64,000 nucleotides of DNA from Mytilus californianus (lineage: Eukaryota). The notes under the pieces are model-generated. The model was not told the origin of the DNA, did not search any database, and worked only from the letters and a program-made list of their open reading frames with translations. Location: positions 133,610,001 through 133,674,000 of the forward strand of contig NW_026262668.1 in the NCBI RefSeq assembly GCF_021869535.1. The letters are read 5' to 3'. Within the stretch, counting starts at the first letter, position 1. Each line of letters begins with the position of its first letter. Made by a program: the position numbers and the translations under genes. Positions 338 through 62,294 of the stretch are shown piece by piece.

Positions 338-380
338 GTACACTTGAGAAAAAATATCTGATGAATGTTGTCAGACTTGA
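338..380 (+). CDS. Exon 1: 43-bp mini-exon, 3' part of a split type-A exon ([15 protein letters not shown])
   Basis: ccag acceptor, gtgagt donor; same 43-bp size and 1-2 phase as 36990..37032 and 40576..40618. Confidence 0.75.
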
Positions 381-3300
381 GTGAGTAATATATAGACATT
401 TTGTTGTATGAGTCTTTTAGCGCTCTTAGTCTACTTTTGATAAAAATAAAGATAGCTATATATTTGAGATCCAGGTGCTATCATATATCTCTGTATACAA
501 CTATTCTAAACAATTTCTGCATTCAACAATTTTTTCAGGAAAGTTCTATTTCCACGTTTCTCATTCCATTATAATGGAGCCTGATCATCAAATTGGATAC
601 AGGAAGTTTAGATAAATAAAGTCTTGTATCTTCAATGTTTTTCACATTTTTTTGCTCTTCCAAAATTATTTTAATAAAACTATATGCCCCACATCAGTAT
701 GGGCTTTGTAAGATCCATTATTTGTATCTGAACTGAATCACATAAAATATAAACCTTAAAAATACTTTTTAATAATGAAATTTCAGTATAGCTTTCCATT
801 ATTGTGCTATTTTAGAAGCAACTGTTAGCTGTACACATGTTTCTTCTTGTTTGTTACAGATATGTTATAGATGATCTATCAGTAACATCTGAATACCAGA
901 TAAGCCTAAATATAAGTATTTGTTTTGAATCAAAGAAGACCTGCTATTTGAGTATGAAGGTTTTCGATCATTATAAACTTCCAAAAGTTTTCTGTAATTG
1001 GGGAACAGGATTTAAAATACCTGGTAAGTCCTATGATAGTTGTAATTTAAAAGAAGAGGAATTTTCAGTGATGTCACCTGAAACTCTGAACACACAAGAT
1101 TGGAAAGTCGGTTATACAATACAAGTTTTCTTTACATGTAGGAATGTTTCCATTTAAACATATATCATACCCCAGGAACACACTCTGAAAAAGGGGCAAT
1201 CATCTAAAGAGGAAATCTTAACAATACTTTATTTTAAGAGGTCTACACAGTTAGTTATACAGCTCATCGTCCCTGAGGCCCATATATTAGAATAGGATAA
1301 ACAAAAATGCAAACATTAGTAAAAAAGTGAAGTATAAAGATAGTTTAAAGTCAAGTTCATTACAATTGGATAAAATGTTATAAAAAAATTAACATGACAA
1401 AATAATTAATATTTAGCATATTAGCAATTGGTTGATTTCAATAAATGATCTGTTATTTTGTATTTGTCAAAATTAGTATTTGTAATATTTCTTTTCAATG
1501 TTTACTTTCACTGTCCAAAAACAATCACCCATACATGAGATATTGATGTACCTTCAAAGGTCCTCTGTGTGTGTTAAATGAGCAGACAGTTCAAGTTTTG
1601 TGAAGAAAAACAAAATTAACATTGTTTGAATTACTAGTATACTGCTAGTCTAGTCAGATAACTTTTAAAGAATTTAATATCAATTTTCTTTATAGAGTTT
1701 TCACTTACAAAATTCTTGGAGGAACAGAAAGAAGAATTATCAGAACAGTTATCAGCATCTGTAACTCAGACTTTATTCAATAAACTTGGTTTATCAGAGT
1801 TCTTCCTGGATAACCAGTGTGACAGAACTAGGGATCCTTTCCTTACTGGCTGGAGAAATGGTAAGTGAAAAAGTGCATGTTCATATTTTTGTAAAAATGT
1901 ATAGCTATTTAATTGTATCTAGCTTTTGTCATCCTTATCTTCAACAGCTTTCTTTTATAAATATTCAAGATTTGCATGCAGATTTTATACAGATTTGCTC
2001 CTTCTTGTTTGGACATGTTTTAATCATTTTTATACGCCCAATTACGGGACATATTATGGTATACTGCTGTCCGTCTGTCTGTCCGTCTGTCGATAACATG
2101 TCGGACAATAACTCAAAAACGCTTTAACCAATCTGCATCAAACTTTGGTGAATTGCTTATATCTACTGACATGAGCTCCCTTTCGGTTTTTGGTGGAAGA
2201 AGACTTTGAAGTCTTCTGAAATCCTATACTGCCGGCTGTAAAATCTTTGAACCGTCACCAGGTGTGTTGCCGTCTCATTTTCTGTGCTTTACTATTTCAT
2301 AACTTCCGTTCCATATCTTGACACCGATGTTTACACATGATCGGTTTCGAGTTAGTCAAATAGCATCTGCATCATTGTATAAAACAAATGTACAGTTAGA
2401 CTTGAAAAACAATCACTATCGTTAGTGGTATAATTTCTCATGTTTTAATGTTTTAATATCTGCCTTTTTATTATGTCAATTATAAGATTTCATCTCATTT
2501 TACATGTACATTATTTATTATTTACTTGTAACCAGATGTTTTTAAAGTAGATTTGGTAGTCTGCATGTGTTAATTTAATTATAATCCGAAACTAAGTCGA
2601 ATGATTCAGCGCCCTTTATCCACTGCCGTTTCTCGTTGGAGTAATTGGAATTAAATAACTGGATTATTCGGGTTAATCCAAACCTCGTTGGTTTCGTATT
2701 TGCGCATGTGCATAAATGGGAAATTTAATTGTGCATCCGAAAGTTTCAAAATAATGATAAACAGAATTTTCATTAATTCAAACAATGCATCTTATGGTAA
2801 TTTCAAGTATCTACGCTGAGAGTACGACTTCAACTCAATGATGCTTGAGTTGTTCCGTCTGTGTTCAGATCTTTAACGCAATCAAGTCATATTCCGGTTT
2901 TAGAAAACATGCGTTTTTTCAAACGAAAGTTAGAATATATTTCAGTATGTTATTGCGATAATAAAGAGTCAAAAGCACACGTAAATCTGCTGGTGCTTTT
3001 CGCTTCAAACAATGCACTGTCAGTTGACAGAAATATCAATGCATGAACTAATGTCAGTTGACAGAATCCATATCAAAAGTACGCATATTTTATGTCAATC
3101 ATTGTCAGAATGTCCTCAATGATTACCTTTATTGCCATTACGTTTCAAAGTTTGAAGTGATCAAAAACGGGATTTAACATATAAATAGTCCAGCTTTTTA
3201 CCTTTATTCGTCATGAAGGTACCCCCATTACGACCCTCGAGTACGGAACCAATAATTTGTTGCCGTCAATCATTCATGAAACATTTCAGAAAATGACCGT

Positions 3301-6300
3301 TTGATGCCTGACAGAAAAGTGCATTCCTACCCTTGTACTTTTGTGTAAAAATATTAGACATGTTAGATGAAAAACAGATATTATTAACAACAGCAAATTA
3401 GTGGTTCTATTTACATTTGACAGAAAAACTTTCAAGTGAAACCTAATCAATTACTAGTATAATTGCTTGCATCAGGTTGACCATACTGAGACGAATGTAT
3501 TGAATTATAGAAAATTTAATTTGAATCTACAGTATTGGTAGATTTTTTAGTTTAGTATAGTCAGTTTTGGTTGAGACATGAGTATTATTAAAAAATATTA
3601 TTTTTGAAGAAAAAATACGTCAAAAGCAATAATGAGACAGAGCAGGCTGGGTTGGTGTGGGCTGCTTTCACGGTAATTCAAGTTACCGTGAGATGCATCT
3701 TCTTCCACCTCAGAGCTATCAGCTCTTTGATTATAAATTTTAGATTTTAGTTTCTGAGTTATGGGATTTTATTCATTAAAAAAAGGGGGATTTTCCAGTT
3801 TTCGGACAATAACTCAAAAATACTTTCACCAATTTGCAAGAAACTTTGGTGAATTGTTTATATCTATTGACATTATGCCTATTTTGGACAGAATTGAATT
3901 TTTATGTCTCAAATTTTCCATGTGGGGACTTTTCATTTTTGTCATTAAATGCTTTCAAGTGTAATTATTTTGTGCGATATGTTACCATACAGTACTATAT
4001 AAATAAATTAAGATTGTGATTATTTGTTAACCCCACCCCCCTAAAAAGCAAACAAGAAAAAAAGAAAAAAAAACTATATTAAAAAAACATTAAAAAACAT
4101 ATTAAAAATAGCAAACCCTACACAATGTACAATCCTTACTATAGTTATTTCTAGCTTCAGTACCTATATAAAGTCTTGTAGAATCCTTATATTTATAAGT
4201 CTTTATTCTATGTCTATTTTGGATTTTGATGTGATTTATATTTTAGAATGTCCAGATTTAGAATTGATCTTAATTAGTCCCCTACCGACGAAGTCGAAGG
4301 GGACTTTAGGTTTGCACTCTGTCCGTCTGTCCGTCTGTCCATCTGTCCGTCTGTCCATCCGTCAGTCCAGAAAATCAGCTTTCCACACTTTTTTTCTTCG
4401 TTCTTGAAGATATTGATTTGATATTTGGTATATAGTATTATCATGACAAGTTATAGATCAGGTTCGAATTTTGTTCTGGTCTGATGATTTAGTCCAGAGT
4501 TATGGACCATAACTCTGGACCATATCTAATGTTAGAGTACTATGTTAAACCATATTTCTGTACAAAGGGAGATAACTCATTTTTAAAAAGACATTCTTTG
4601 TTAAATTATTTGAAGAATTTTTTGGCAGGTTTGTTTGTTGTTTCATGTATTTAGTATAAACTACTTTTCTGAATGCTATATATATATATAAAAAAATTAT
4701 GAAGAGAAATCCTTTAATTAGATAATAATCTATTTTTATTAATGTATATATTTCAATACATTACATTGTGTAGATAAAAGTTGTTGACATTTTATAGATA
4801 AGTTACAAATCTATATTAGTTTGTGACAAATGAAAGAAAATATATTTGGAACTATTAATTATATTTGATTATAATTTGAAAATAGATATACACTGTATTA
4901 CATCATATCTAATTTTAGAGAACTATTAATCATATCTAATGTTTTTTCATCATGCTTATATGATATTGATTGATAATTGGTATATAGTTTTATCATGACA
5001 AGTTACAGATCAAGTTCATATTTTTGTTTCGGTCTAATAATTTTGTGCAGAGTTATGGTCCTTGGACTTGAAAAATTCACTCTTATAATCAGTTTTTAAC
5101 ACTGTTTTTAGTCATGCTTGAAGATATTGACATGATATTTACTTTTTGTTTACACCATGACAAGTTATAGAACAAGTTAGCATTTTGTTCCAGTATAATG
5201 AATTTTTACCCGGTAGGGGACTATGTATTGCCATGCAATACTCTCAGAATGCTTGTTTGATTTATTTTAGATTGTCCAAGTAGTGATTTGTCACTAACTT
5301 TACCATCATCAGTATCCTGTGTTGTGCCAACTGACTGTTCAGCCTTAACCTGTTGTACAGACATAAAGTTAATCAGTCGTTCTATTAGTACACACATAGC
5401 AATCGATCCCTGCAATTACACCATGAGTATAAGTATAGAAAAGCTACAAGTACATGTATCTTTACTGAAATACACATGGGGAAAAGAAAAACAGTTTACA
5501 CTACAAGGTGGAATAGTTTTCAAGTAAGTTTTTAAAATATTGTTCAAATTAGATTTAAAAGTTGAACTTTATTTCTTCAGTCATGAAGACAAACTGTAAG
5601 GGAAGTAATGTAATCATATGCCATGATAATGGTTTGAAACCACAGCCACTTGTCTCAGCCTACCTTTATACCTTTATTAATACAAGTTACTCAACTTGCA
5701 TTTTCGTGTAATGACACTTGGTCATAATATTTTTGTCATTTCTCTATCAGTGGTGGTCTATGTAAATTAAACTTATTATGCTGTAAATCTTCATTAATTT
5801 ATCTACACAATGGTGTATAAAATGCCTATCTTTGCTGTCTGAATTATTGACAGGTCTTCCAAGTAGGATATGGACCATTTTCTTAACAAATTACTGAACA
5901 TCACATTCCTTATTTGATATGACTGTTTAGAAAGACTAACTGCCTTGGAAGATCCCTATTTGATGATAGCAAAGCATTATGTCTTTCAGGTTTTTATACA
6001 ACATACCAGTTATTTTCTTATTTCTATAATCAGTGCTCTCCTATTATGTAAATCAGAAACTTATTTTCATTTAGGTATAATATATACAACTTAGGAAGTG
6101 AGAAGATGTTTATGGTAGATCTGAGCTTACATATCTGTTTGGAACAGAGTGATCCCAATAGCTGTGTTTTTAATGTTACTATTTTGAAGAATGCTAAACT
6201 TCCCAAACCACTATGTAACTTGGACATGGGATTCAAACAGGACGGTAAGTTTCTGTGGAAGAACTGCAGTACTTAACAAAGATATTTTCCCACACTGTCT

Positions 6301-9300
6301 TGACAAGAGAGTAGTTTTTGTTTGGAAACACAGTTAAACTAATCAAGTAATTATTATCACAACATCTCATTCAGGGTAATGTGCAAAGAAAACATGTAAA
6401 CTTTCAGAATGAGTGACTTGAGCAATAACTGTGCAATAATAGAAATGTAACCAATATCCCAGTCATAAGTTTAGTTTTGAACTCCTTAACCAAGGCTAAA
6501 TACAAGTAAGTTTTTTTTATTTATGCATGACTTTAAATGATTTACTGTATTGTTGGTATTTTGTTTTAGATTTCTCCTTTACCAGCTGGCTAACAGAGAA
6601 CAGTATAGTGAACACAGGGACATTAAAGGATATCTTTGTCATACAACTTCTGAGAGAACTTGGCGTAGATCAGTATATGATGTCACCCCCCTGTGATGCA
6701 CAGGCTACACCGTATTCTCCTACAAATAATCAGGGATGGAATTTAAATAGTATGTATTACTGCCAAATCTTCTTAAAAGAATGTAAATCCTTAATTTACT
6801 GTACTAAAAATATAGACAAATGTGTACAGTTCCTTTTTGTTATTTTTTTTTTACTATATAGAAAGTAGATTGGAAACTTAAAACATTTTATTTTTTGGTT
6901 TTTACATGAGTGATTTTTTTAAGGTTTTGGAATTCACAGTTGCTGCATATTCTGTTTACATTGCAGTAAACCTTAAATATGTAAAATAATATATAGTCTA
7001 GGTCAATGCAATAGTAATTATCTGTGAAATATTCTCTCCAGAATGTATGTCTAGTAAACCAGTGATGTTAGGGAAGCTACCATCTGATACTTCCTGCTAC
7101 CTGTCGGACACATGTACAGGTGTACACTGCTGTATCCAAATAAACCAGTTAGGACGAGCCATTACTGTGTACTTAGACCTGGATTCATGTCACAATACCT
7201 TTACAATTGGCATAGAGAAATTCATCCACAAGATATCTATTCTGGAAATAGAGTATGGTGCTATACACTCTTTCTCCATGTTTGGATTTGTAAACATAAA
7301 GTAAGTTTTGTAGATATCATTGATTTTTTATAGATTAAAATTTTGTAGAGAAATGGAGTGACACATCTTATCATCAATTGATGCCTGTTCAATGTTTGAG
7401 CCAGTTTAAAGTTACAAAAAGGAGCAAAGAGAGATAATTTTATTAGGAATTTTTATATCCAATGTAAACCTTACTTTTATACAAGATTATGGTTTAATTA
7501 TGTATCATTCACCAAGGTAATCTATTTAAATTTTTTCTGATGTGACATGACAAAAAAGGTTTTGAATTGATTTTGTTTTCCAGTTATAAGATAGAAGAGT
7601 TATACAATGAGGGGATGTTTATAGTCAGTATGACAGCTAGTGTATGTTTAGAATCTAACGGTCCTTGTGAACTGGAGATACAAGTGCTGGATAATGTCAA
7701 ACTTCCAAAACCTTTATGTAACTTCAATCAAGGATTCGCTATACCAGGTATAGGTCTATTTAAAGATAGTTTCAATGTTTATTAAGAGAATTTGTAACAA
7801 TAAGGCCATATGAAATGAGCCATCTTTTAGCCATGACATTTATAAATGCGGAATATCTGATCTTTTATCTTAAATTAACTTCGTTCATAATATATAACTT
7901 TACTACATAATTTCATATGTGATGTCACTGTGTCATCTAGATAGAAAAAATTAAAAGAAGTATATATACATGAGACATAAACAATAAAATTTTCAGAAAT
8001 TATAAATAAATTAAAAGAAATAGAACTTATGTCACTGTTTTCAATCTGAAAATTGCTTAAAGGTGATGATCTACGCTCACACCTTACAGCAAGGTCAGGA
8101 TGACTCAATTATTTGTGAACAAAGACATATTTTACAGTTACAATATATCAATGATACCTAAAATAACCAATTCATGATATCAATAGCTCTGCTGAGATTT
8201 TTGGTTTAGTCAATTAAAAAATGATTTCCTTGTGAATATTCAAACATTTCATTGTATCTACAGTAACTGCATATTCCACAAAAAAGTGTTGTTTCTTTTT
8301 TTTGCTATGAATTGAATGTTTTTGTATAGAAAACTTTTTTTTTTAAATGTATTTGCCTATTTTTTTGCATAAAAAAAACAATATAATTGAAATAAATTAA
8401 AGTTGGAACTCTTTTTCCTATAGATTTTTCCCTGGCTTCTTGGTTAGATAAGAATAAGGTAGATATAAAACTACAGTTACAATCATATGCTAGAGACTTA
8501 CTGATGGAAGAACTTGGAATAGCTGGGTATTTACAGAGTCCACAGTGTCAATTCTCAGACTACCAGTTAAATACAGACAGATGGGACATAGGTAGTAAGT
8601 ACACACCTTCTTCTCTCTGACCTAATAACAATAATCTCTCAAAGGTATTTGTTTTTGTTTTTATTTTATATTTAGTTTTCTTCTCAAGGCTCAGGACAAA
8701 TGAGAGTGCAAAAAAACAAATTCTCAAAAATGCTTTCTTGCACATCTCAATGATATTGTATGACAGAAGAAATTTGAAAAAAAAATCTATTTTTCCTATC
8801 AATTTAAAAATAAAAAAACCATTTGATATCAACTTATGACATTTTGCATATACAGTTTTCGGAAAAAAATATTCATTGTAAAACAATTCTTTTTTGTTGG
8901 TAATTTCAATGTAAACATATGTAACATTAATCAGTGATTTGTATGACTTTTATAGTGTGTGGAGCAGACTTGTCATTACCTACCCTCCCTAAGAATCTAG
9001 CCTGTAGGTTACCAGATTATTGTACAGGGATACAGTGTTGTGTGTATATCCCTGTCCTAGATATGTATGTAGAAGCACATCTTCTACTGGATATATGTGA
9101 TTTGAGACTCAGTATTGGATTGGAGAACATGGTCATCAATGAATCCTTGGCGCATTACAATTATAATACAGAGAAAATCGTCTCACTTGGAAATATGGTG
9201 AGATTAAAGTAAGTATAGATATCTGTCTTGTTTGATAAGAAAGGAATTACCAACCTTGTGTTTTCATCAGATTTACTGAAATAGACTTTAATTTGGTTGA

Positions 9301-12300
9301 TTGATTGATTGGTGTTTAACACCACTTTCAACACTTTTGTGCTATTTCGTTGAGGATGCTGGAGTGCATGGAGAGAACCACCGACCTTTTGGTGGGAAAA
9401 CTGACAATCCTAGTAAATTAAGAATGGGAGTTGAACTCACCTGCTGCGTGCTCAAACTCACAACCTCAGTGTCACAGGCTAGTGATACAGTAGTTACAGT
9501 ACTTAGACCACTCGGCCACCGGGGCACCTTAATTAGTTGAAGGTCTTGATTTTTAAAAGAAAACTTGGACTGACTATACTTATTCTGCTATATTTTGGGT
9601 AAACTGGTGAAGTCACAGTGATCTAAAGGAAAACTTCATACAGCTAATTAGGCAGTATACAATTTACATGATTTATGTCTTGGTTTAAATTCAAATAAAC
9701 AAACATGAAATTGGTATATTTTCCTTAATTGATAAGACTAGAAACAAACATATTGAGGACCAAATTTACTTAAAATAATGTATGAAATATTGTTTTTGAT
9801 AATTATTAGGGCCCCGCCTAGTGGCGGGTCGACCTATAGTGGTCAGTCTGTCTGTCTGTCCGTCCGTCCGTATCAAATTGTGTCCACTCTATATCTAGAG
9901 AACCATTATAATTTCATACTTTATACTTGTTATGTATATTAACCAACACCAGAGGGTGTGTCATAATGTTTGTACAACTTCTTAGGTCAAAGTTCAAGGT
10001 CAGCTGGGCCCACAGAGATGGCTCCCATCTTAATGATGTCTAGTTTATAATGTTTCCCTTTTGCTCTAAGACTAGCTGATAATTGAGTTCTATGTGAAAC
10101 AAAATCTTGTCAGTAACCTTTCGCCCTTTTCCAAATGTTGATTATGTACAGTTATGAGTTTGTCTTTTTTCTTTCTACAGTTATAAAATAGAGGATTTAG
10201 AAGCTGAAGAGAAGATTTTATTCAGTTTAAAGCTTGAGATTTGTTTTGAGACCAAAGGAGATTGTTTATACAGCTATGATGTATTTAAAGACACAAAGAT
10301 TTCTAAACAACTTTGTGACTTGAACAGTGGATTTCCTATCCCTAGTAAGAAACCTTAGTATTTTACAGTATTGGTCATTCAAGTTTTAACCTTTAATTTT
10401 CTTAGCTATTTTGGTTTCAAGAAATATTTCATTGTTAAGGTGGTACCAAACACCTTATTTATCTATAATTAATTTGGCTTGTTTAATTTTCATAAAATTT
10501 TGACAAAATACTTACTTTGACCCTTTGACAAAATATAAAAATTTCAAAAAACGTGAACAACACACTTTATCGGAAAAATTTCATTTGATAAATAGCAGTT
10601 TGACAAAAACTAATTTTGATCATTGAGAAGCTTAATATTTCCTTAACAATAGAACATGATTAAAACGTTCAGCTGATTTTTACAGAGTTATCTCCCTGTA
10701 GTGTTACGTACCACCTCAAGCTAGTATTTATGAAGGTCAATGGTTTGGATATTTGCTTATTTTTTAGGTTTTGTAAAATTTCCAAACATTAAGAAAAAGC
10801 TGAGAATTATTTATCCTATAAATGCACATACTTATAGCATTTTATCTTATTTATGAAAATGTATTTTTTTCAAAAGAAATATACTACAGTTATTGACTCT
10901 ATCAATTTTTCAGGGAGATAACTTTTCCACAAACATATTTTATTTAAATGGAGATTCTTTAATAGGATATTACTTCAAATATTAATTATTTATTATCATT
11001 TTGAACTTCTAACCATCTCTACAATTTTATGATGTCTCCATTTTGGATTTTATTCTTTTAACTCAGTAACATGATTATAATCTTTGGGAATTGTTTCCAA
11101 ATTACATCTGCATTTATGTCCTTGGATGGCAGTTTTTTTTTTTTTTTCATTGAACTCCAGAAGAAATCTGACATCTTCAATTGGTTCTCCATAATTGAAT
11201 GTCATAATCATTACTGATGTAAGAGAGATGATATTAGAGCTAAATGTTTTGAGAAGTTATGGCTCCTAAATTGGACATTTTTGGCGGAATAGAAATTGTG
11301 TGGGCAAGGTGAAAATAGGTCATGTCAGATCAGACAATAATCAGAGGAAGTGAAGTTGGATATGTTTATTTAAGCCATATGTGATTTTAAGGACACGTTT
11401 GAACGAAATGGACGCATTTAGGCGAAGCAGACTTGTTTGGGGGGATGTACATGTTTGAGAGTGTTTCATATATAAAGAGGAAAGAGTCTTTTCAACATCA
11501 TGAAATTTTTACTTTTAGATTTCAATTTGAATGGCTGGTTGACAAAACAGGGATTTCCTTCAAATGTAACACAGCTGTCAGAATTGATGACATCCAAATT
11601 GTTAGAACATTTAAGTATAGCTGAATATTTACAACAACCAGGATGTGATCTGACGTCCAGTCCTCTATACAGTACTGCTGATAGTCATGGGTGGAACACG
11701 GGTATGTTTATTACGTTGATTTAAATGTTTCAGTTTTCAGTTCGCTGGAGCCCTCTTTGTATTGCGAACAACATTATACTCAATGATTACAATGTTTTTT
11801 TTTTAATATTACTAAAATTTCTAAAGGATTTTTTATAAAAATAATTCCATTTTTTTTTTAAATGCAAGAAGACAACACAGTTTAAGGAGTTAAGGTCTGT
11901 TTTGTTATTATTGTAGAATGTGATGGCATGATAATGTTACCAGACTTACCCGGTGGTATGATTTGTCACCTGGATTCTACCTGTACATCTGTTACCTGTT
12001 GTACACCTGTTGCACTGATTAACAGAAATATCAACTCCTACCTGACCATTGATCCATGTAATTCAGTCTTCAAACTTGGAATAGAGAATTACCAGTTTGA
12101 GTTCTCCTTATTTAAAACAGATTTCAATGTACAGAAACAATTCAATGTGGAAAGAGTAATAAATATTAAGTGAGTATAACATTTTTTAAAGATTTTCTGA
12201 GAAAGAGAGTAAAATTAGTGGTTATGTTTTCAAAGTCAAATCCTGATCTTGATTATAGACAATGTCACGTCCTTGGACATTACTACATCGTGCATGTGTC

Positions 12301-36300: not shown

Positions 36301-39300
36301 TAAAGGCGAGAGAGACCATAGTTTTCCATTTGCTCTTTTCATTGGTCTGAAAAATTTTCTGCACTTTTTTCTTTAATGCCTGAATAAATTGATTAGATAT
36401 TTGGTATATAGTCCTATCTACAAGAAATTACTGATAAATTTCGAATTTTGTCTGTAGAGGATTTTTTTCAGAAAGTTTTTGACCATCAACATAGAAAATT
36501 GCCAGAAAGAGAAAAAGCTTGGTTCCTTAGTGGTTGAGTTTACATGAAAATATCTGCATCTCTGGATATATATTCTTACCTGATTAAGGATAAGATGGAA
36601 ATTCATTGCTCACACTATCAGTAACGATTTTTTTCTCAATAGGAATTAAAAATTCATTAGACCTTATCCATTATTCCTGCGGGTATTGTATCTGCATTAT
36701 CCTTAGAATGTTTGTTTAGTTAAAATGTTTCCATACTGGTAAAAAGACAAGTAATATGGAGGAGAATTAATGCACGTGTTAGATGTTTCCATAGAAATAT
36801 CTGCATCATAGATTGTCAATAATACTGTGCACAGATCAAGCATGTATTGTTAAACAGCTCCTTCTGCAGAGTTTGTAGCTCGTCAGTAATACTGCGCACA
36901 GATTATACATGTAATGTTAAACACCTCCTTCTGCAGAGTTTGTAGCACATGATATATTTTACTTATTATAGAACTGTGTTCTTTTTCAGGAAACAATGAA
37001 ACTTTCTCACTTTCTGGGATAGTAAATATGATGTAAGTACTTCAGTTAAAATTGGTGTTTGACATAGTTATGACTCATATGTTTTTCTGCAGTAGCAGAT
37101 GTTTCATTTCTTTATACTAAGTTTACAGTTTGATTTCATTCAACCTTTTGTGTATAAAAGCAAACTCAACCCATATTCCACAAAAATTTCAAAATTATTT
37201 CAATAAAAAAGAATAGAAAATCTGCAAAAATGAGAAGTTAGTCTCAGGTACTTTATACTAGATATCCAGAGGTACCAGGTACTCTTTACAGATAATTTTA
37301 TGTTATAGAAATACAAAACAGTTTATTACATGAGAGTTCACACAATGATTTGTATACATATTATTTTAAAGGATTTATTGGGACATTACATTTAATCTTA
37401 AAAAAATACAATAGGTCACAAAAACATCTTAGAAGAATTTTGAAGATGTTAAAACGGTCTGTCACTGATTAATAAATTTGAAAATGAAACACATATGTTA
37501 TCACAGTTATTTAAGGTTATGATATCCCCTAATCGTACACCATATGCAACTTGCATACTGGTATTGTGCCCTAAAATGTCAAAAAGGTTTTTTGTCTCGC
37601 CTGCGACGAAAGTCGTGAAAAACGAGACATAGGGATTGCTTTTCCGGCGAAGGCGATGATGAATGAAGATGCATTACTATCAGTACATATCAGTTTGACA
37701 ACAATTTTGAGTCCCTGCCCCCTAGGCCATGGTCCAGTGACTTTGATTTAATTAGCCATTCAATGTTAAGTTTTCTGCTTAAGTTAGTTTGATAGGAACT
37801 ACTTGCGATAGATCAATGATATTTTCTATTAAGTTGCATTACTATCAGTACATATCAGTTTGACGACTATTTTGAGGCCCTGCCCCCTAGGTCATGGTCC
37901 AGTGACTTTCAATCAATTAGCAATTTCAATGTTAAGTTTTATGATTAAGTTAGTTTGATAGGAACTACTTACAATGGACAATATTTTCTATAAAGTTACA
38001 TTGCTGTTTGTACATCTCAGTTTGTCAACCATTTTGAGGCCCTACCCACTAGATGGTGCAGTGACGTGAATTAATTACAATGTTGCTGTCCATCAGATTG
38101 TCTTTTTCTGAATTTTATGCCGACAGGCGAGACATATCTCTGTGTCAACAGTTTATTTCGAATAATATTTTAATATTTATATGAAAGTTACATTTTTATG
38201 CTTTGATTTATAGGTATACTGTACAAAAATTAAAAGATGATCACCAATATATAGCAGATTTGAGTCTGTCTGTCTGTTATACTGATAAAATCCCATGTGA
38301 TTATGAAGTCTCATTGCTGACCAGTAACATTATCAGCTTTGGATCATGTGAAATATCTGCAGGTTTCTTAAATCCTGGTAAGTAAACTTTTTGCTTCAGC
38401 ATGGTGTAACTATTTTGAGAACTGGTCATCTTATGTTTTATCTTATATAATACATTTTATTTATTGAGTGACCTGATTATTTTAGATCTAGACTTATGTT
38501 GTCTCTTTGACACATTCCCCATTTCCATTCTCAATTTTATTATGCACCATTATAATGTTTGTAATGCAAGAAATCAGAAAAAGATAATGTGGATTGAAAG
38601 ATCTACTATTAAGATTGTTTGTGTCCTTGGTCCATAAAATTAAATTTGCTTGTTTTGTGAACCATTAATTCTTATAAGCTATTATATAATCAAATTATTA
38701 AAAAAAACTAAGGTTCAAACTGATTTGACACAATTAAAAATCCTTTTAAAGATAGTAATAATATGGCTGCACTGTGTTTTCAGATTTCTCACTGACTAAC
38801 TGGTTTAGTGACAGAGGTTTGACAGTTAACTGTAAAAACTGATGGCATTGTGATTTGAGATTTCTTAATGAGTAACTAGTTCAATGACAGAGGTTTGACT
38901 GTAAACTGGGTTATAACTGATGGCATTGTATTTTTTAGATTTCTTTATGACTAACTGGTTGTATGACAGAGTTTTGACTGTCAACTGGGTTATAACTGAT
39001 GGCATTGTATTTTTAGATTTCTTAATGACTTAATTGGTTCAATGACAGAGGTTTGACTGTAAACTCGGTTATAACTGATGGCATTGTATTTTTAGATTTC
39101 TTTATGACCTAACTGGTTCTATGACAGAGGTCTGACTGTAAACATGGTTGTAAAAAATGAAAACAACACGTTAAATAATTTTATGTGTCTGAAGAGCTTT
39201 TCTGGGTTTATCTTCATCAGGAACGCTCAAAGCCGAATATTTGAAAGCAGAGGATGTATAAGAACCGAAACAGTTGTAACTGATGGCATTGTATTTTCAG

Positions 39301-42300
39301 TTTCTCACTGACTAAATGGTTGAGTGATAGAGGTTTGACTGTAAACTCGGTTGTAACTGATAGCATTGTATTTTTAGATTTCTCACTGACGAAATGGTTG
39401 AGTGATAGAGGTTTGACTGTAAACTCGGTTGTAACTGATAGCAATGTATTTTTAGATTTCTCACTGACTAAATGGTTGAGTGATAGAGGTTTGACTGTAA
39501 ACTCGGTTGTAACTGATGGCATTGTATTTTCAGATTTCTCACTGACTAACTGGTTGAGTGATAAAGGCTTGACTGTAAACTCAGTTATAACAGATGTAAC
39601 ATCAGACAGATTGATTACAGAGCTTGGTTTGTCAGACTATGTTGGATATTCTGATAGTTGTAGTCTTACAGGTTCACCTTACAAAGATGCAATAAATGGT
39701 TGGAATAATGGTAAATAGAAATTAGCAATTGTTCACATATAGGTACAAGAAAATTCCTTACCCTTTTTTTGTAAACTGGAGATTGAATAAACAATGCCAA
39801 TGCTTCAAGTGATAAAAACAAATGTTACTATTTGATTGTTCAGAATCTACTAATTTTAATTTATTGCAAGTTCTAAATGGTAACTATTGAATTATTAATT
39901 ATCACTATTTTTTTAAATATTTTTTCAGAATGTTCTAGTGTGACCACCTTACCAACTTTATCAGGAGATATTGCATGTCATATGTCATCATGTTCACAGT
40001 TCTCCTGCTGTGTGTTTAATGACGTTCTCCATCGATCGTTGAAATCATCCATACATCTGGATACCTGCTCTTACATGCTCAAGGTGTCTATAGAAGATTT
40101 GCATTACGAGTTCCAAATGCTTAACTATCAGTGGGGTAAGAGATATATAGAGTACTGAAGGAATTTTGTACTGCTTCATGACATCCACCATGTGTAAACA
40201 ATGTAAGAAATTAGACAATCAGAAATAAATATTATCTGAATCTTGAAAGCTTTAGCAAATTTAATAGGAATAAAGTATTCCGAAATTAGAGTTGAATTTT
40301 TATGAATTACTTCTGAGTAGTTCTTAATGTGTTATGGTTAATAGTTCATGTTAATTAGATATGAATATACTCTGATTGTTCTTGAACAACACATGTACTG
40401 ACTCAGAAATTTAAATGTTGCTAGCAAACCAGGAAAGATTTACACGTGAAAAGTTTGGTATTTATACATGTAGAAATACATCTCCAGTTAACCTCTTAAC
40501 CAAATGACTTTAATTGCATCACCATCATGAAGATATTTGATTAGATTCAATATGAAACAATTATTTTCTTTACAGGAAAAATACAGAATGTAAGACTTCA
40601 TGGTGTGTTTTCCTTCAGGTAAAATGTTAAAAATGCATTGGAACTTTAAAAAAACTATCATATGACAAAAATGCCTTTGAATCAAAAGTAAATTAGTGGA
40701 TGTACATGACATTGTGACAAGTATTATATGAAATAACGGAAATCAATCATATATCAAACAGCAGTGCTTTTATTGCTGTTCTTCATACTGACAGTTTCTG
40801 GGAAGTTTTATACATCTCATTCTTTTTTCTTTATAATGCAACTCTGTCCCCCCTTTCCGGGTATATTTAAAAGGAGAAGCCTTGACTTGATTTGAACAGA
40901 ATTATTAGGAATTACTGCCTTAGGATGAGCGTAAAGAAATATTATAATGGTCCAACATGTTAAATTTGCTGTGAGGAGGTTTTTACTCACAGTCCTAGTT
41001 TAATTTTTACTTTTTTTGTCAATATAAAAATTAGAAGATGTGGTACGATTGTCAAAAAGACAACTCTCCACCTTCTTAAGGACAAACAATATTAACCTTT
41101 ACCTAAAAAGAACTTTTACAAGAGAATACATATGATATCCACTGACATCATAGATTCTCAAATGTATTATGAGAAGACCCTTTAAGAATAAAAAAAGAAA
41201 CCAGGAGGTACTTGCCTCATTGTGTATGAAGCTTGAAATGTTCAAGTAAAAAATAAAAAGAACAATTATTAAGTGTTCAAAATATTTCATTGAAGATCTA
41301 CGTTCTATTTTGAAAGGAGAATTAAACAAGAGTTCTCCACTTTTATTTCAGTTTTACCATCTACAACATCCCATCTGAAAGTAAATTCTCAGTTGATGCT
41401 GAGATAAAACTATGTTTTGAGGCAAACAACAATACATGTCTTAAAGAATACTCTATATTAAATAATGTTCAGCTGAAGTATGAGGTTTGCAGAATCAATC
41501 AAACTCAACCTGTTGGTGGTAAGTGCTTAATGAAGTTTAATCAAGTCTACTTTCATAATGTTTTTAATAATTGATTTAAATTTAAGCATTTAATTCATTA
41601 AAAAATTAAATGGAAACTTTAGAAATAGGGTAACTTCCACACTCCTTTCGCTTATATGTATATATATACCTTCTGCCTAATGTTCACAACACTCCTATAT
41701 AAGTGTACTGGAAAACTTAACTGAATATATGTGAATCAGAGACATAAGTTGAAATGTGTAAGTTTTTCAACAAAGTGTTGAATAGATTTTTAAATGTTTG
41801 ATATAAATGGGAGATAATCTCAGTCATTCTGTGAAGGAACAATTAAAAAGTATTGAATTGGCTGTAATAATATCTCCCTTCCATATCATTGATTAGATAG
41901 TTACCAGTTGAGGATCAAGGATTTTGCCCACTAGTAAGACAGTGTTAGGAGGGGGACTTGCAATAAGTCTATGCATTAATCATATATGTAGTTCCATAAG
42001 TGGGGGCCTCTTATATCCAAAGATCTAAATATAGTTCCCAATTGCTAATTTAAATGAATGAAGTTGAAAAAGTAGTCATCCCATTGACATTCTGAAAGGT
42101 AAAAACCTTTAGTCTTAGCACATAATGTGTGAAAAAAATCACTGTATTTTTGCTTTCAGGTCTAGCATTTGATTTCTGGAAACAATCTTATTGTACCTCA
42201 TACACAGGAGACTTTCTGAATGGTAGGTACATCCATTATTTAGATACAATTATGTTGGTAAAATTATATATATATGTAAACTTGCAGGTTTTTGGCTTGA

Positions 42301-45300
42301 TTGGAAGTCTTAAAACAGTATATATAAAAATAAAATGATGTTGTATGATTGGCAATGCAACAACCTTCCACCAGAGACCAAATGATTTAGAAGTAACGGT
42401 AAGCAAGTAAAAGTCACAAACTTAACAATATAATGACATTGTATACCTCCATTTTCATTAATTCAAACAATGCATCTTATGTTACTTTCAAATATCTACG
42501 CGGAGAGTACGACTTCAACTCAATGATGCTTGACAAAAATACACGGATTTAGTTGTTCCGTCTGTGTTCATATCTTAAATGTAATCAAGTCATATTACGG
42601 TTTTAAAAAACATGCGTTTTTTAAAACGAAAGTTAGAATATTTCAGTATGTTATTGCGATAATAAAGAGTCAAAAGCACACGTAAATCTGCTGGTGCTTT
42701 ACTCTTCAAACGATGCACCGTCAGTTGACAGAAATATTTTTGTACAAACTAATGTCAGTTGACGGAATCCATATCGAAAGTACATAGTTTTCATGTCAAT
42801 CATTGTCTGAATGTCCCCAATGATTACTTTTATTGCCTTACGTTTCAAAGTTTAAAGTGATCTAACACAGGATTTAACATATAAATAGTCCAGCTTTTTA
42901 CCGTTATTCATCATGAAGGTACCCCCATTACAACCCTCGAGTACGGAACTAATAATTCGTTGCTGTCAATCATTCATGAAACATTTAAAAAAATGACCGT
43001 TTGACGCCTGACGGAAAAGGGCATTCCTACCCTTGTACTATTGTGAACAACAGCAAATCAATGATTCACGATTTTGGCCAAGCACATACAGAAAATGAAC
43101 AGGTTTGACAAGTGTCAACAAGTGCTCAAAACCCAATCCCTGACCAGGACAAATCTGCATTGGATATATTTAGCATTTTTCAATATATGTTTATAATAAG
43201 AAAAACAAGTAACTGTACACAACTATAACAATTCCTGATTAACTGATTGATGTTGGTATTAAACCCTACTTTAAGCACACTTGACTTAAATCATGGTGGC
43301 CAGTTTTTTTTATACGAAGGAAGTCAGAATACCCAAAGTGAACTATCTACCATTGACAGAAAAACTTTCAAGTGAAACCTAATCAATTACTAATACACCT
43401 TATCGCTAATCCCGCTTGACCCGAGAATCTGTCCCGCTCGAACTTTTGACGTCATACAACAATCACTTTTCCATTGTGGCGTCAGACATTTTGTATTATG
43501 ACGTCAAAATTTTACGGGAACCTGTGTGATGTCCAGTAATGGCGGACAAATAGCGATAAGGTGTATTGCTTGCATCAAGTTGACCATGCTGAGGCGAATG
43601 TATGGAATTATGGAAAATTTGATTTGAATCAACAGTATTTGTAGATTTTTATGTTTAGTATAGTCAGTTTTGGTTGAGACATGAGTATTATTAAAGAATA
43701 TTATTTTTGGAAGAAAAAAATACGTCGAAAGCAATAATGGGACAGAGCAGGCTGGGTTGGTGTGGGCTGCTTTCATTGTAATTCAAGTTACCTTTTATGC
43801 ACCTTCTTCCACCTCAGAGCTATCAGCTCTTTGATTGGGTTTCTCTTAGTAAAAGCATGGACTTTGCAATGACTTTTTGTGAGCTTTCCTTGCAGGACTT
43901 CTAATTTTATATTACATAATGATTTGTATGATCTTTACTATTATTTTGCATCAGGTTGTAGTAGTGTACCGTCACCAATATCTTTCCTATTTGGATGTCA
44001 CTTGAGCAGTGATTGCCAAGGGATTGAGTGTTGTGTCTGATCTTTACTTTATCTTCCATCAGGTTGTAGTAGTGTACCGTCACCAATATCTTTCCTATTT
44101 GGATGTCACTTGAGCAGTGATTGCCAAGGGATTGAGTGTTGTGTCTGATCTTTACTTTATCTTCCATCAGGTTGTAGTAGTGTACCGTCACCAATATCTT
44201 CCCTGTCTGGATGTCACTTGAGTAGTGATTGCCAAGGGATCGAGTGTTGTGTCTGATCATTACTTTATCTTCCATCAGGTTGTAGTAGTGTACCGTCACC
44301 AATATCTTCCCTATTTGGATGTCACTTGAGCAGTGATTGCCAAGGGATTGAGTGTTGTGTCTGATCTTTACTTTATCTTCCATCAGGTTGTAGAAGTGTA
44401 CCGTCACCAATATCTTCCCTATTTGGATGTCACTTGAGTAGTGATTGCCAAGGGATCGAGTGTTGTGTCTGATCATTACTTTATCTTCCATGAGGTTGTA
44501 GTAGTGTACCGTCACCAATATCTTCCCTATTTGGATGTCACTTGAGCAGTGATTGCCAAGGGATTGAGTGTTGTGTCTGATCTTTACTTTATCTTCCATC
44601 AGGTTGTAGTAGTGTACCGTCACCAATATCTTCCCTATTTGGATGTCACTTGAGCAGTGATTGCCAAGGGATTGAGTGTTGTGTCTGATCTTTACTTTAT
44701 CTTTCATCAGGTTGTAGCAGTGTACCGTCACCAATATCTTCCCTGTCTGGATGTCACTTGAGCAGTGATTGCCAAGGGATCGAGTGTTGTGTAGGCACAA
44801 ACTTCATCTCAGGCTCCAGGAATGTAAAAACCATGCTGAAAATTTCACAGTGTGATGTGATGGATGGGAACATAGAGCGAAAGACCTGGACAAAAAGTGG
44901 ACTTGATTCTTTAACAGGTATTTATATATCAAGGAAATGTTTTAATGGTAAAGACATGACTATATGAGCAAGAAACAAGTTTTTAAAAAGTTTGATATTG
45001 ACAGCTGCTGCTTTAAAGAAAAAATCTCTTTCAAATTTCTGGACATAAAAATTGAAAGAGTATAAAATATTTTTAAGAAGTCAAAGTATCTAAATTTGTA
45101 ATTAAAAATATTCTATTCTTCAGGATCTTCTGTATCGGAGAAAGTAAATGATGTATTTGATTTAATGGTTGATGTCATAGAATCCTCATCATCCTTGTAC
45201 AAGGTCACTTTGTCCTTGAAGACTTGTTATATAAAGGACATTGGCTGTCAGACCTTAACTCTAGCAGAGGAAGTAACCTTAATCAGACCTACATGTACTA

Positions 45301-48300
45301 GTGGTAAGAGGAGAAGGAGGAGGAGGAGTGTGGATGGGTAAGATTGGTTTTTATCACAATGTTTAACCATATTGAAAATATCTTACAGACATATAAGGAG
45401 TGTTTCCATATTCTTCATCCATCTCGTGATAAATTCATGTCCATATAACATGTTTTTATGCCCCTGCCATAGCGGAGGGGTTATTAAGGTTTACTTTGTC
45501 TGTCTGTCCGTCCATATGTACGTCCCAAATTGGTTTCTGTTCTCTAACTTTAGTTTGCCTCAACCAAATGTTATGAAACTTATACACAATGCTTATTACC
45601 ACAAAACTCAGATCAAGTTTTAATTTTGCTAGTGTCATTTACCATTCTGGAGTTATAACGTTATATGCAAGCGGGAGCATCATCTGTGTCCCATGGACAC
45701 ATTCACCATTTATTGTCTATTATAAAGCATACAATTTAATTCTACAGTTTTGCAAAGAAAACATGAAATAATCAACATGACTTCTGTTTTAGATTAAATC
45801 TTGCTGATCTAAAGACTGGACTTAGAAATCTATTGGAAAGAGGTGCATCATCAGCTGAAATTAAAGATTACATGTCAGATGTTAAAAATTTGGAAGTAAG
45901 TTTTCATTCTTCAGAAATAAAAAAATGTTGTTTCATTATGAGATGTGCACCAGGGAAATAAGTTGCAAGTTATTGTTTTTAGCTCACCTGGCCTAAAAGG
46001 CCAAGTGAGCTTTTCTCATCACTTGGCATCTGTCGTCGTCCATAGTTGTCGATGTTAACTTTTACAAAAATCTTCTCCTCTGAAACTACTAGCCCAAATT
46101 TAACCAAACTTGGCCACAATCATCATTGGGGTATCTAGTTTAAAAAATGTGTCAGATGACCCGACCTGCCAACCAAGATGGCCGACATGGCTAAAAATAG
46201 AACATAGGGGTAAAATGAAAGTTTTGTCTATTATTTTGAAACTGTTATAAATAGAGAAAATCTAACTGGGACAGGGCAAAAAATGTTCAGAATGATGAGC
46301 TCTATCAATTGTCCATATTCGTCAAAACTATCAGACAACTTCTTATAGGAGTTATTTCCCTTAAATGACAAATTTTACCATTTTTGTTCATTTTTGCCTA
46401 TAATCTTGAAAACTATAATAGATAGAGAGAAACTTTAAATTGCAAAAATGATCAGCATGACAATTTCTACAAATAAGTCTGTGTGGTCAAAATCGTCTGT
46501 CGAATTTTCATTAGAGTTATATCCCTTTGATGATGATTTTTACCATTTTTTTGCATTTTTGCCTTATATCTTAAAAATTATAATAGATAGAAAGAAACTT
46601 AAATTAGCATAAATGATCAGCAAGACAAGATCTATAATTAAGACATTATAGAGGAAATCGTTCAACAATTCCTTATTGGAATTATTGCACTTTGATGATG
46701 ATTTTTACAATTTTTTTTGCGTTTTGCCTTATATGTTAAAAATTATAATAGATCAATAGACACTTATATCACAAAATTGATCAACAAGGCAAGTTCTACT
46801 AACAAGTCAAATTTTGCTGATATAGTTAGTAGACTGTCACTATTTGTAGGAGTGATTGCCCTTAAATTAGGATTTTTTTTTACCCTTTTTAAAGTTTTTT
46901 GTGTTGTGAGCAAAAACTAAAAGAAAAAAGGGACACTAAACAAACTGAATGATCAGCAATACAAGATCAACAAAACAGATTTTTGTCATGAATTCTGTTC
47001 TCGTCTACAATGTTGAAGAGTGTCCTTTGTTGAATATGCACATAGACCAAGGTGAGCGACACAGGCTCTTTAGAGCCTCTAGTTTATATGATTTCGGAAT
47101 AATAATTTTATAAAATTTTACATTCTTTGTATTTGAAATTTTCCTGTCGATAGAAATGGTCCTATCTTTTAAATGATGTCATAATTTATCACCTAAAAGT
47201 TAAGTATTTACAGAATATTTATGTGACTTTTCCTTTAAAAATTATGATTTTAGGGTTTGATCACAAGCTTTGGAACTTATACCCTAAATGTTAAGTATTT
47301 ATTATGCTGAAAACAATTGAAAATTAATAATAGTTGCTGGTAACTTGCATGGATTTTGCGTTCTCTTTTGGTTTTTGTTTTTCATTATTTTCTTGCTAGT
47401 CCCTAGACAAGCTGAAGTCATGTTAAGGCATTATGAGTCTTGGATGGAATGATTAATTTGATTGAATTCCTTGTAGACTGAAGAAATAATGAAAAACCTT
47501 CAAGTAAAAAGTCTAGACGTTAAAGATACCACTACTGGACTACAGTCTACTATGAAAGCCTTGGGACAAGATAATCCTTCAACATTGTCTGTACTTTGGT
47601 CTAATGACAAAGGAGTAGAGGTGAAGGGAGGTAACTATTGCTAAATATAAAGGTTTACTGCAAGTAATGTTGATTTCAACTTCACAATTTAAAAGAACCA
47701 TTGTAAATCATGATGGGAAACCCAAACAATTGAATATTTCATATACTGGGATATCTATTCTCCCATATGTAGGTATATCCTTTTTTTCATCGAAAAATAT
47801 GAAAGACAGACCTAAATTGTTGTAAATTTTACCCCAATTCTCTGAAATTGGTGGATAGAAGGGAGAAATGCTGAAATATTAGTTACAGACGTTAGGATGA
47901 AAACATTTATTTCATGTGAATTCAGAGCATAATTTAATGTCGGGAATTTTATTTAGACATATCATTATCAAGGGTCAGGAAAGAACAGATTATTTTACCT
48001 TGATGTGAGGTTTTTGTTGCTACCCTTCATTGTGTAAATTTCACCTGTTGCACTTTGAATTACTCACTGACGAATTCTGTAACATCAACTTACATTTATT
48101 GAAAACATTGTAGGTAAAGGTGTTGTTGGTATGCTGTCAACAGCAACAGATATTCTAGGTCGTGCCGACCAGGCATTTGTTGTTGGTAAAGGACTTTCTA
48201 ATGCTGGCGTAGAATTACTGGGACAGAAGCTGGCAAACATGACAATAGGAGACATCAAAGCCATGCTAGATTTGAAAAATATGGACCCTCTTGTTGTAGC

Positions 48301-62208: not shown

Positions 62209-62294
62209 GTAAGTGAATTACAAGTTAGTAAATAATAGGTGTATTATCATACAGTAATACACATCTGGAGTGGTATTAGATGGACCATTGGCAG

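What the first reader, a model, noticed from the sequence alone, without database searches (positions are those of the whole stretch)
338..45337. Unassigned ~195-aa, 10-Cys module repeated at least 12 times in a giant extracellular-type protein
Seen: three exon types recur with fixed phases and motifs. C is FSLxxWL...LLxxLGLxxYL...C...GWNN. A is C...LPxLP...C...CTGIxCC...IDxC...IEKL...YxWG...FxLxG. B is YxIxDL...VCFE...PC...KLPKPxCNW. Inference: the true unit is C+A+B, because the VWA exon inserts between B and C and the array ends after a B at the polybasic site. That makes it a class 1-1 module, the phase typical of shuffled metazoan extracellular domains. I cannot match the Cys pattern to EGF, TSP1, VWC, CUB, TIL or LDLa, so it may be an unnamed domain. 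The array lies upstream of a furin-type site and could be released as a long multivalent rod.
Basis: partly seen in the sequence, partly recalled or inferred. Interest (0 to 1): 0.8.

Follow-up and report, generated by a model that had tools for sequence, protein, structure and literature searches.

The report
Unnamed ten-cysteine repeat in giant mussel protein
A mussel gene really does encode at least 12 tandem copies of a roughly 198-residue, ten-cysteine domain that matches no named family or clear known fold. The domain marks an unstudied family of roughly 7,500-residue cell-surface proteins shared by molluscs, echinoderms and amphioxus.

Summary
On the + strand, 338-45337 holds a C-A-B exon triplet repeated in fixed order. 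There are ten complete modules of 192-201 aa, a first module cut by the window start, and a short twelfth. One VWA exon lies between B6 and C7, and KRRRRRR follows the last B.

RNA contigs and stranded reads cross four consecutive junctions (B7-C8-A8-B8-C9) at GT..AG, giving phases C 1-1, A 1-2, B 2-1.

Homologues are giant "uncharacterized" proteins in bivalves, gastropods, echinoderms, hemichordates, amphioxus and a nemertean; a flatworm fragment also carries the module. Full-length ones show:
- a signal peptide, Vitellogenin_N and an M23-like domain;
- about 12 modules;
- a conserved polybasic site 1-10 residues after the last module;
- a roughly 3,700-aa conserved part with PAN and fn3;
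- one transmembrane-like segment.

The parts
338..1023 (+). Module 1, cut by the window start: 3' piece of a split A exon (338-380, phases 1-2) and B1 (860-1023)
   Evidence: B HMM E 5e-28; AG/GT flanks and phases
1696..6244 (+). Module 2: C2 1696-1860, A2 5271-5523, B2 6075-6244 (196 aa)
   Evidence: HMM E 2e-24, 2e-33, 9e-28; splice flanks, sum 588 nt
6570..7747 (+). Module 3: C3 6570-6749, A3 7042-7300, B3 7584-7747 (201 aa)
   Evidence: colinear with P0209 from residue 17
8424..10344 (+). Module 4: C4 8424-8594, A4 8956-9208, B4 10181-10344 (196 aa)
   Evidence: 55-71% identical to P0209 156-351
11519..13378 (+). Module 5: C5 11519-11701, A5 11917-12169, B5 13215-13378 (200 aa)
13699..15912 (+). 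Module 6: C6 13699-13878, A6 14512-14767, B6 15749-15912 (200 aa)
16868..17443 (+). Single-exon VWA domain, 576 nt, phase 1-1, with the DxSxS motif, inserted between B6 and C7
   Evidence: Pfam VWA 8.5e-31; AG/GT flanks and phase; same position in P0209, residues 747-940, 64% identity; absent from P0163
17727..22686 (+). Module 7: C7 17727-17885, A7 20148-20400, B7 22523-22686 (192 aa)
   Evidence: an RNA contig starts B7 at 22523 and joins 22686 to 23978
23978..25550 (+). Module 8: C8 23978-24154, A8 24649-24901, B8 25387-25550 (198 aa); all junctions seen in RNA
   Evidence: GT..AG joints in X16, X20 and X21
26938..30783 (+). Module 9: C9 26938-27108, A9 29103-29358, B9 30614-30783 (199 aa)
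   Evidence: joint 25550>26938
34708..38377 (+). Module 10, diverged: C10 about 34708-34875, A10a 35909 to about 36117, probable A10b about 36990-37035, B10 38214-38377
   Evidence: HMM E 4e-6, 8e-25, 6e-25; P0209 1527-1719; A10b found by motif only
39534..41515 (+). Module 11: C11 39534-39710, A11 39929-40151, B11 41352-41515
   Evidence: HMM E 5e-26, 3e-27, 3e-24
42160..45337 (+). Module 12, shortened: mini C exon 42160-42222, A12 44711-44917, B12 45124-45337
   Evidence: P0209 1916-2066
45306..45326 (+). Polybasic KRRRRRR, a furin-type site directly after the last module; donors at 45303|4 and 45337|8
   Evidence: sequence; the equivalent run follows the last module in P0163, P0209 and most other homologues that carry an array
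48113..62211 (+). Exons of the conserved post-array part of the same gene, including a PAN domain at 53374-53832; the gene runs past the window end
   Evidence: colinear with P0163 3436-4247 and P0209 2165-3050; PAN_1 1.8e-6

Best explanation
The stretch is the middle of one very large, transcribed mussel gene. It encodes a tandem array of an undescribed extracellular domain of about 198 residues. Each domain is built from three exons (C, A, B; module phase 1-1) and carries ten conserved cysteines. The predicted fold is a small three-helix cap on a nine-strand all-beta body. Copies follow one another without linkers, so the array should form a long disulfide-stiffened stalk.

The gene belongs to an old, uncharacterised family of giant proteins. 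Full-length members have a signal peptide, a Vitellogenin_N (lipid-transfer-type) head and an M23-like domain. About 12 of these modules follow, then a conserved polybasic site right after the last module. After the site come a conserved part of about 3,700 aa with PAN and fn3 domains, and a single membrane-spanning segment near the C end.

Inferred mechanism: the precursor is cut by a furin-type convertase into two halves. One half is head plus module stalk. The other is a membrane-anchored half. The modules act mainly as a spacer or multivalent scaffold that holds the head, and in this Mytilus copy an added metal-dependent VWA binding site, far from the cell surface.

Shown here: the array, its splicing, its conservation, the lack of any named family, the conserved polybasic site, and the signal peptide and transmembrane-like segment in homologues.

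Inferred only: cleavage, stalk geometry, ligand and biological role.
Against: The window holds neither the start nor the end of the gene. The head, signal peptide and membrane segment are therefore inferred from homologues that are only 30-76% identical. Proteolysis was not tested. Two donors at 45303 and 45337 exist, and RNA across that exon was not examined. Only four junctions were checked in RNA, and inclusion of the VWA exon was not. Model coordinates and PAE were not available to me, so stalk geometry and most disulfide pairs are unverified. InterPro, CDD, PANTHER and AlphaFold DB could not be searched, so a name or a fold relative elsewhere is not excluded.
Confidence: 0.6

Rival explanations
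1. The module is a very diverged member of an already known fold, for example a FAIM-like beta sandwich with an added helical cap and disulfides. It would then be a new family of an old superfamily and not a new domain type.
Confidence: 0.25
2. The protein is a secreted matrix or adhesive component (shell, byssus, egg coat or mucus), and the modules polymerise or bind matrix. It would not be a membrane-tethered stalk.
For: The modules are Cys-rich, a VWA with a MIDAS-type motif is present, PAN and fn3 lie downstream, and there is a furin-type site as in several matrix precursors. Some gene models lack a hydrophobic segment.
Against: Most full-length homologues have one transmembrane-like segment near the C end and a Vitellogenin_N head. 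No paper or proteome hit was found for any locus name. The family also occurs in animals without shell or byssus, such as starfish, amphioxus and acorn worms.
Confidence: 0.12
3. The array is a decaying or non-functional exon field, with pseudo-exons spread by the minisatellites at exon edges. The open frames would be leftovers.
For: Many tandem repeats copy splice sites and exon ends. Modules 10-12 are shortened.
Against: All modelled exons of modules 1-9 are open, correctly phased and keep all ten Cys at only about 30% identity between copies. Spliced RNA exists. The same array is kept in several phyla.
Confidence: 0.03

Closest known systems
Uncharacterised giant proteins of marine invertebrates, e.g. 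Mytilus galloprovincialis LOC143046845, Sinanodonta woodiana KAL3862601.1, Haliotis rufescens LOC124111176, Asterias rubens LOC117298529, Branchiostoma belcheri KAI8518956.1
   Same: They share the module array, the polybasic site after the last module, and a colinear post-array part with PAN and fn3. The M. galloprovincialis protein also has the VWA between the same B and C.
   Different: None has a name, a paper or a described function. Module number varies: about 12 in gastropods and echinoderms, 13-21 in bivalves, and one partial module in a sub-family of about 5,100 aa. VWA was seen only in Mytilus copies.
Large lipid transfer proteins cut by furin-type convertases (insect apolipophorin II/I, vitellogenins)
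   Same: Full-length homologues start with a signal peptide and a Vitellogenin_N domain, and they carry a conserved polybasic site inside the precursor. That LLTP precursors are processed at RXXR is from my own knowledge of the family.
   Different: Known LLTPs are 1,500-4,500 aa soluble lipoproteins without this module, without PAN/fn3 tails and without a membrane segment. The window itself does not contain the Vitellogenin_N part.
FAIM N-terminal domain fold (PDB 3mx7)
   Different: The score is weak, identity is 10%, there is no sequence-family hit, FAIM is cytosolic without disulfides, and it has no helical cap.
Tandem Cys-rich repeat arrays of giant secreted proteins (VWD-C8-TIL units of FCGBP, zonadhesin and mucins; ZP-N repeats of abalone VERL)
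   Same: The layout is alike: many head-to-tail disulfide-rich units in an extracellular giant, a furin-type site, and exon-phase symmetry (comparison from my own knowledge).
   Different: There are no Pfam VWD, C8, TIL or Zona_pellucida hits. Structural Z to VWD and ZP-N chains is only 2.5-3.3.

Membership tests
Named Cys-rich extracellular domains (EGF, TSP1, VWC, CUB, TIL, LDLa, VWD, Zona_pellucida, SEA) | Significant match to the family's Pfam profile | tested here: not met
   There are 0 families for the exons, and 0 for P0016, P0017 and P0163:1-3500. For 97 whole modules only scattered chance hits appear, with E>=0.005 and one or two members each.
   The model has three short helices followed by nine strands. 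There is no SEA hit in Pfam and no SEA chain among the fold hits.
Class 1-1 exon-shuffling module | Module bounded by phase-1 introns on both sides | tested here: met
   RNA joints place the C start and the B end at phase 1. All modelled modules sum to multiples of 3. The VWA exon is also 1-1.
Giant Vitellogenin_N-headed family (unnamed) | Colinear post-array region with PAN | tested here: met
   Window 48113-62211 is colinear with P0163 3436-4247 and P0209 2165-3050 at 37-76% identity. PAN_1 lies at 53374-53832.
Giant Vitellogenin_N-headed family (unnamed) | Polybasic site directly after the last module | tested here: met
   KRRRRRR at 45306-45326. The same feature is present in most array-bearing homologues.
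Giant Vitellogenin_N-headed family (unnamed) | Signal peptide, Vitellogenin_N head and C-terminal membrane segment in this gene | not testable with these tools
   Both ends of the gene lie outside the window. These features were seen only in homologues.
Proprotein-convertase substrate | Actual cleavage at R-X-K/R-R | not testable with these tools
   Only the motif and its conservation are shown.
VWA domain (inserted exon) | Pfam VWA match above the gathering score, with the DxSxS MIDAS start | tested here: met
   107.9 bits against a cut-off of 23.8. DESGS is seen in the translation.

The most novel reading that the evidence does not exclude
The module is a truly new fold. It is the signature of an ancient family of about 7,500-residue proteins, found in spiralians and deuterostome invertebrates, that nobody has described. 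These proteins have a lipid-transfer-type head, are split by a furin-type enzyme and are anchored in the membrane. The family is not seen in the vertebrate or ecdysozoan hits listed here. It would hold a lipid- or particle-binding head some 50 nm from the cell on a stalk of twelve or more of these domains, a cell-surface device with no studied counterpart.
Probability: 0.3. Interest if true: 0.75.

Novelty: new variant of a known kind. Interest (0 to 1): 0.6.

Why it matters
Domain catalogues are thought to be nearly complete for large, conserved metazoan extracellular domains. Here a 200-residue domain, with ten conserved cysteines and a confident predicted structure, has no Pfam family and no clear structural relative. 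It is present in hundreds of predicted proteins from several phyla. Naming it would annotate more than 2,000 residues in each of many giant "uncharacterized" proteins. It would also expose a conserved architecture (lipid-transfer head, module stalk, convertase site, PAN/fn3 half, membrane anchor) that can now be tested in tractable animals such as starfish, amphioxus or mussels. It is also a clean example of exon-phase-symmetric module amplification, and of insertion of a foreign 1-1 exon (VWA) into such an array.

Tried and rejected
- **Pfam on single exons and C-exon sets:** nothing.
- **PDB sequence search:** profiles of A, B, C and whole modules found nothing meaningful. The post-array part of P0163 found nothing either.
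- **Word search with the A-exon profile:** only exon-sized unnamed fragments from metagenome assemblies, because of the length filter.
- **Is the helical C part a diverged SAP domain?** Rejected. In the first unit of homologues the SAP hit is an insertion between the Cys of the C part and the first Cys of the A part. The profile comparison aligns only the LLExLG..C stretch before it (E 3.9e-4, probability 36%). No module hits SAP.
- **Is the beta part an internal duplication?** There is no support (hhalign E 0.05).
- **Is P0017 (M. californianus LOC127719258), or another listed protein, this gene's own product?** No. None reaches 90% identity. The best is P0209 at 50-76%.
- **Literature:** searches by domain combination and by accession or locus names gave nothing relevant.
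- **Findings search by sequence:** blank, so the link to s1-320583 stays open.
Whole-module work used database homologues by reference.
- **Not available:** model coordinates, so disulfide geometry and inter-module angle were not measured.
Full report
**What is in the sequence.** The window is AT-rich (about 31% GC) and looks like invertebrate animal DNA with long introns. A self tblastn with exon-sized peptides, and HMMs built from the exon peptides and run on all stop-free segments of both strands, find three exon types. They occur only on the + strand and always in the order C, A, B. There are 12 B, 10 C and 11 A hits. Most have E between 1e-22 and 1e-37, and the minus strand gives nothing below E 0.01. 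Every modelled exon of modules 1-9 has AG and GT flanks, and each C+A+B set sums to 576-603 nt, or 192-201 codons. Copies are only 19-50% identical to one another. All keep one Cys in C, six in A and three in B, so this is an old array under constraint and not a young satellite.

I count three kinds of module:
- ten complete modules (2-11);
- a shortened twelfth module, with a 63-nt mini C exon at 42160-42222, A12 at 44711-44917 and B12 at 45124-45337.

A single 576-nt exon at 16868-17443 encodes a VWA domain (Pfam 8.5e-31; DESGS motif). It lies between B6 and C7 in phase 1-1. KRRRRRR (45306-45326) follows the last B.

**Transcription and splicing.** Twenty runs hold the stretch or part of it, two of them on record as RNA. 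The RNA runs are labelled mollusc. I laid three RNA-type contig sets and one raw RNA-seq run on 22300-27300. This gave GT..AG joints 22686>23978, 24154>24649, 24901>25387 and 25550>26938. They were seen in RNA contigs of 1.8 and 2.6 kb (X16) and in X20, and three of the four also in one or two raw reads each of X21. The raw reads lie on exons only with the first mate on the minus strand, which fits a + strand mRNA in a stranded library. Only this part of the array was tested. Inclusion of the VWA exon, and the choice between the two donors at 45303 and 45337, were not.

**Is the module a known domain?** I searched exon by exon and by reference, as required, and found no Pfam family. A profile of the 11 A exons, scored against 1.84 billion representative proteins, gave 793 hits at E<=1e-3 and 34 at E<=1e-30. 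The long hits are annotated, spliced proteins with up to 17 modules. They come from these animals:
- unionid mussels: Potamilus KAK3609658.1 and Sinanodonta KAL3862601.1;
- several Mytilus species, Mya and Patella;
- the nemertean Lineus and the flatworm Macrostomum;
- Branchiostoma.

All are named hypothetical or uncharacterized.

These database proteins let me study whole modules by reference. Modules abut without linkers at a period of about 200 aa. In an alignment of 97 modules, ten Cys columns are conserved, and 89 of 97 modules keep all ten. Cys3 and Cys5 are lost together in two modules. Cys8 and Cys9 are lost together in four modules, and a fifth lacks Cys9 and Cys10 instead. This pattern implies those two disulfides.

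Pfam finds nothing in a 2,806-aa protein made of 14 modules, nothing in the first 3,500 aa of the Sinanodonta protein, and only scattered chance hits in the 97 single modules. The Pfam lists precomputed for the giant homologues likewise contain no family for the array. Profiles of A, B, C and the whole module find no PDB sequence.

**The gene and its family.** The Sinanodonta protein P0163 (6,862 aa, partial) has 17 modules. KRRRR follows the last one, and then comes a region colinear with window 48119-62211. The gene therefore continues past the polybasic site and beyond the window end. A PAN domain lies at 53374-53832. M. galloprovincialis LOC143046845 (P0209, 5,878 aa) is colinear with the window from 7041 to 62211 at 50-76% identity. 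It has the VWA between the equivalent B and C, RRKRRKR after the last B, and a hydrophobic segment about 60 aa from its C end. That identity is low for an orthologue within Mytilus. P0209 may be a paralogue, and several paralogues exist per Mytilus genome.

A word search with the post-array region found 78 proteins of 3.8-8 kaa, all uncharacterized. They come from bivalves, gastropods, a cephalopod, starfish, a brittle star, a crinoid, acorn worms, amphioxus, a nemertean and a coral. The amphioxus and bivalve post-array regions are 40-48% identical over about 2,200 aa, which is more conserved than the modules themselves. A module HMM finds about 12 modules in gastropod and echinoderm proteins of about 7,500 aa, up to 21 in bivalves, a single partial module in a sub-family of about 5,100 aa, and none in the coral proteins. 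In most array-bearing proteins a polybasic run lies 1-10 residues after the last module.

Full-length members begin with a signal-peptide-like segment and a Vitellogenin_N domain. They carry an M23-like domain, and a SAP motif inserted in the first unit between the Cys of the C part and the first Cys of the A part. They have one hydrophobic 21-mer 60-290 aa from the C end.

**How it most likely works.** The following is inferred, not shown. The precursor enters the secretory pathway and is cut by a furin-type convertase right after the array. This gives a head-plus-stalk half and a membrane-anchored PAN/fn3 half, much as lipid-transfer-protein precursors are split. The linker-free, disulfide-rich modules form a long stalk or multivalent scaffold. 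The Mytilus-specific VWA exon adds a metal-dependent binding site in the middle of that stalk. Release as opposed to non-covalent retention is unknown.

**Novelty.** The sequences are in public databases but unnamed, and I found no paper on them. The domain has no Pfam family and no clear structural relative in the PDB. I could not search InterPro, CDD, PANTHER or AlphaFold DB. It has many repeats, a vWA, a furin site and a membrane segment, and belongs to an undescribed family. It may be a paralogue, but I could not link it by sequence. Its "SEA-like" label does not fit the fold found here. Earlier notes call the genome Mytilus californianus. I did not verify that directly; the listed M. californianus proteins are paralogues of this gene.

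Noticed in passing
window 14756-15171, 15880-16552, 20697-22537, 29338-29542, 30374-30672, 38769-39143, 39273-39595, 43925-44792, 54430-55711, 58490-59194: Minisatellites sit on the exon edges of this gene. Each repeats a splice site plus the adjoining exon end, for example 36.9 copies of a 50-bp unit with the B7 acceptor and 8 copies of a 108-bp unit with the A12 acceptor plus about 30 codons. For B7, the RNA contig uses the last copy (exon starts at 22523). The recurrence at so many junctions of one gene is unexplained.
   Followed up: partly
window 45303-45338: Two G|GTAAGA donors lie 34 nt apart and bracket the polybasic codons. Only the second keeps KRRRRRR, and the two leave different phases. 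Which one is used was not tested in RNA.
   Followed up: no
window 18150-19343: A 63-bp tandem repeat of 18.9 copies at 90% match lies in the intron between C7 and A7, in a stretch of strongly negative GC skew.
   Followed up: no
window 22801-23311, 24972-25305, 26141-26474, 26642-26975: These intronic stretches have very high depth in the RNA contig sets, and many reads run on into unlike sequence. They are probably high-copy transposable elements expressed elsewhere in the genome.
   Followed up: no
homologues P0019:1540-1612, P0165:1275-1338, P0023:140-207, P0166:670-740, P0037:750-821: In the first clear unit of the array, a SAP motif (Pfam E 1e-7 to 7e-10) is inserted in a loop between two invariant Cys. 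An extracellular SAP is unusual. The flanking Cys may be a disulfide pair.
   Followed up: partly
homologues P0216, P0218, P0219, P0221, P0222, P0225, P0229 (about 4,900-5,200 aa): A sub-family in amphioxus and hemichordates keeps the Vitellogenin_N head and the post-array part but has only one partial module where the others have about 12. It may show the state before the array was amplified, or after its loss.
   Followed up: no
window 48113-62211: The post-array exons are more conserved than the modules, at 37-76% identity to homologues. Apart from one PAN domain they also lack any Pfam family. They include repeated stretches with W.GF.D..(S/A)G..Y-like motifs.
   Followed up: partly
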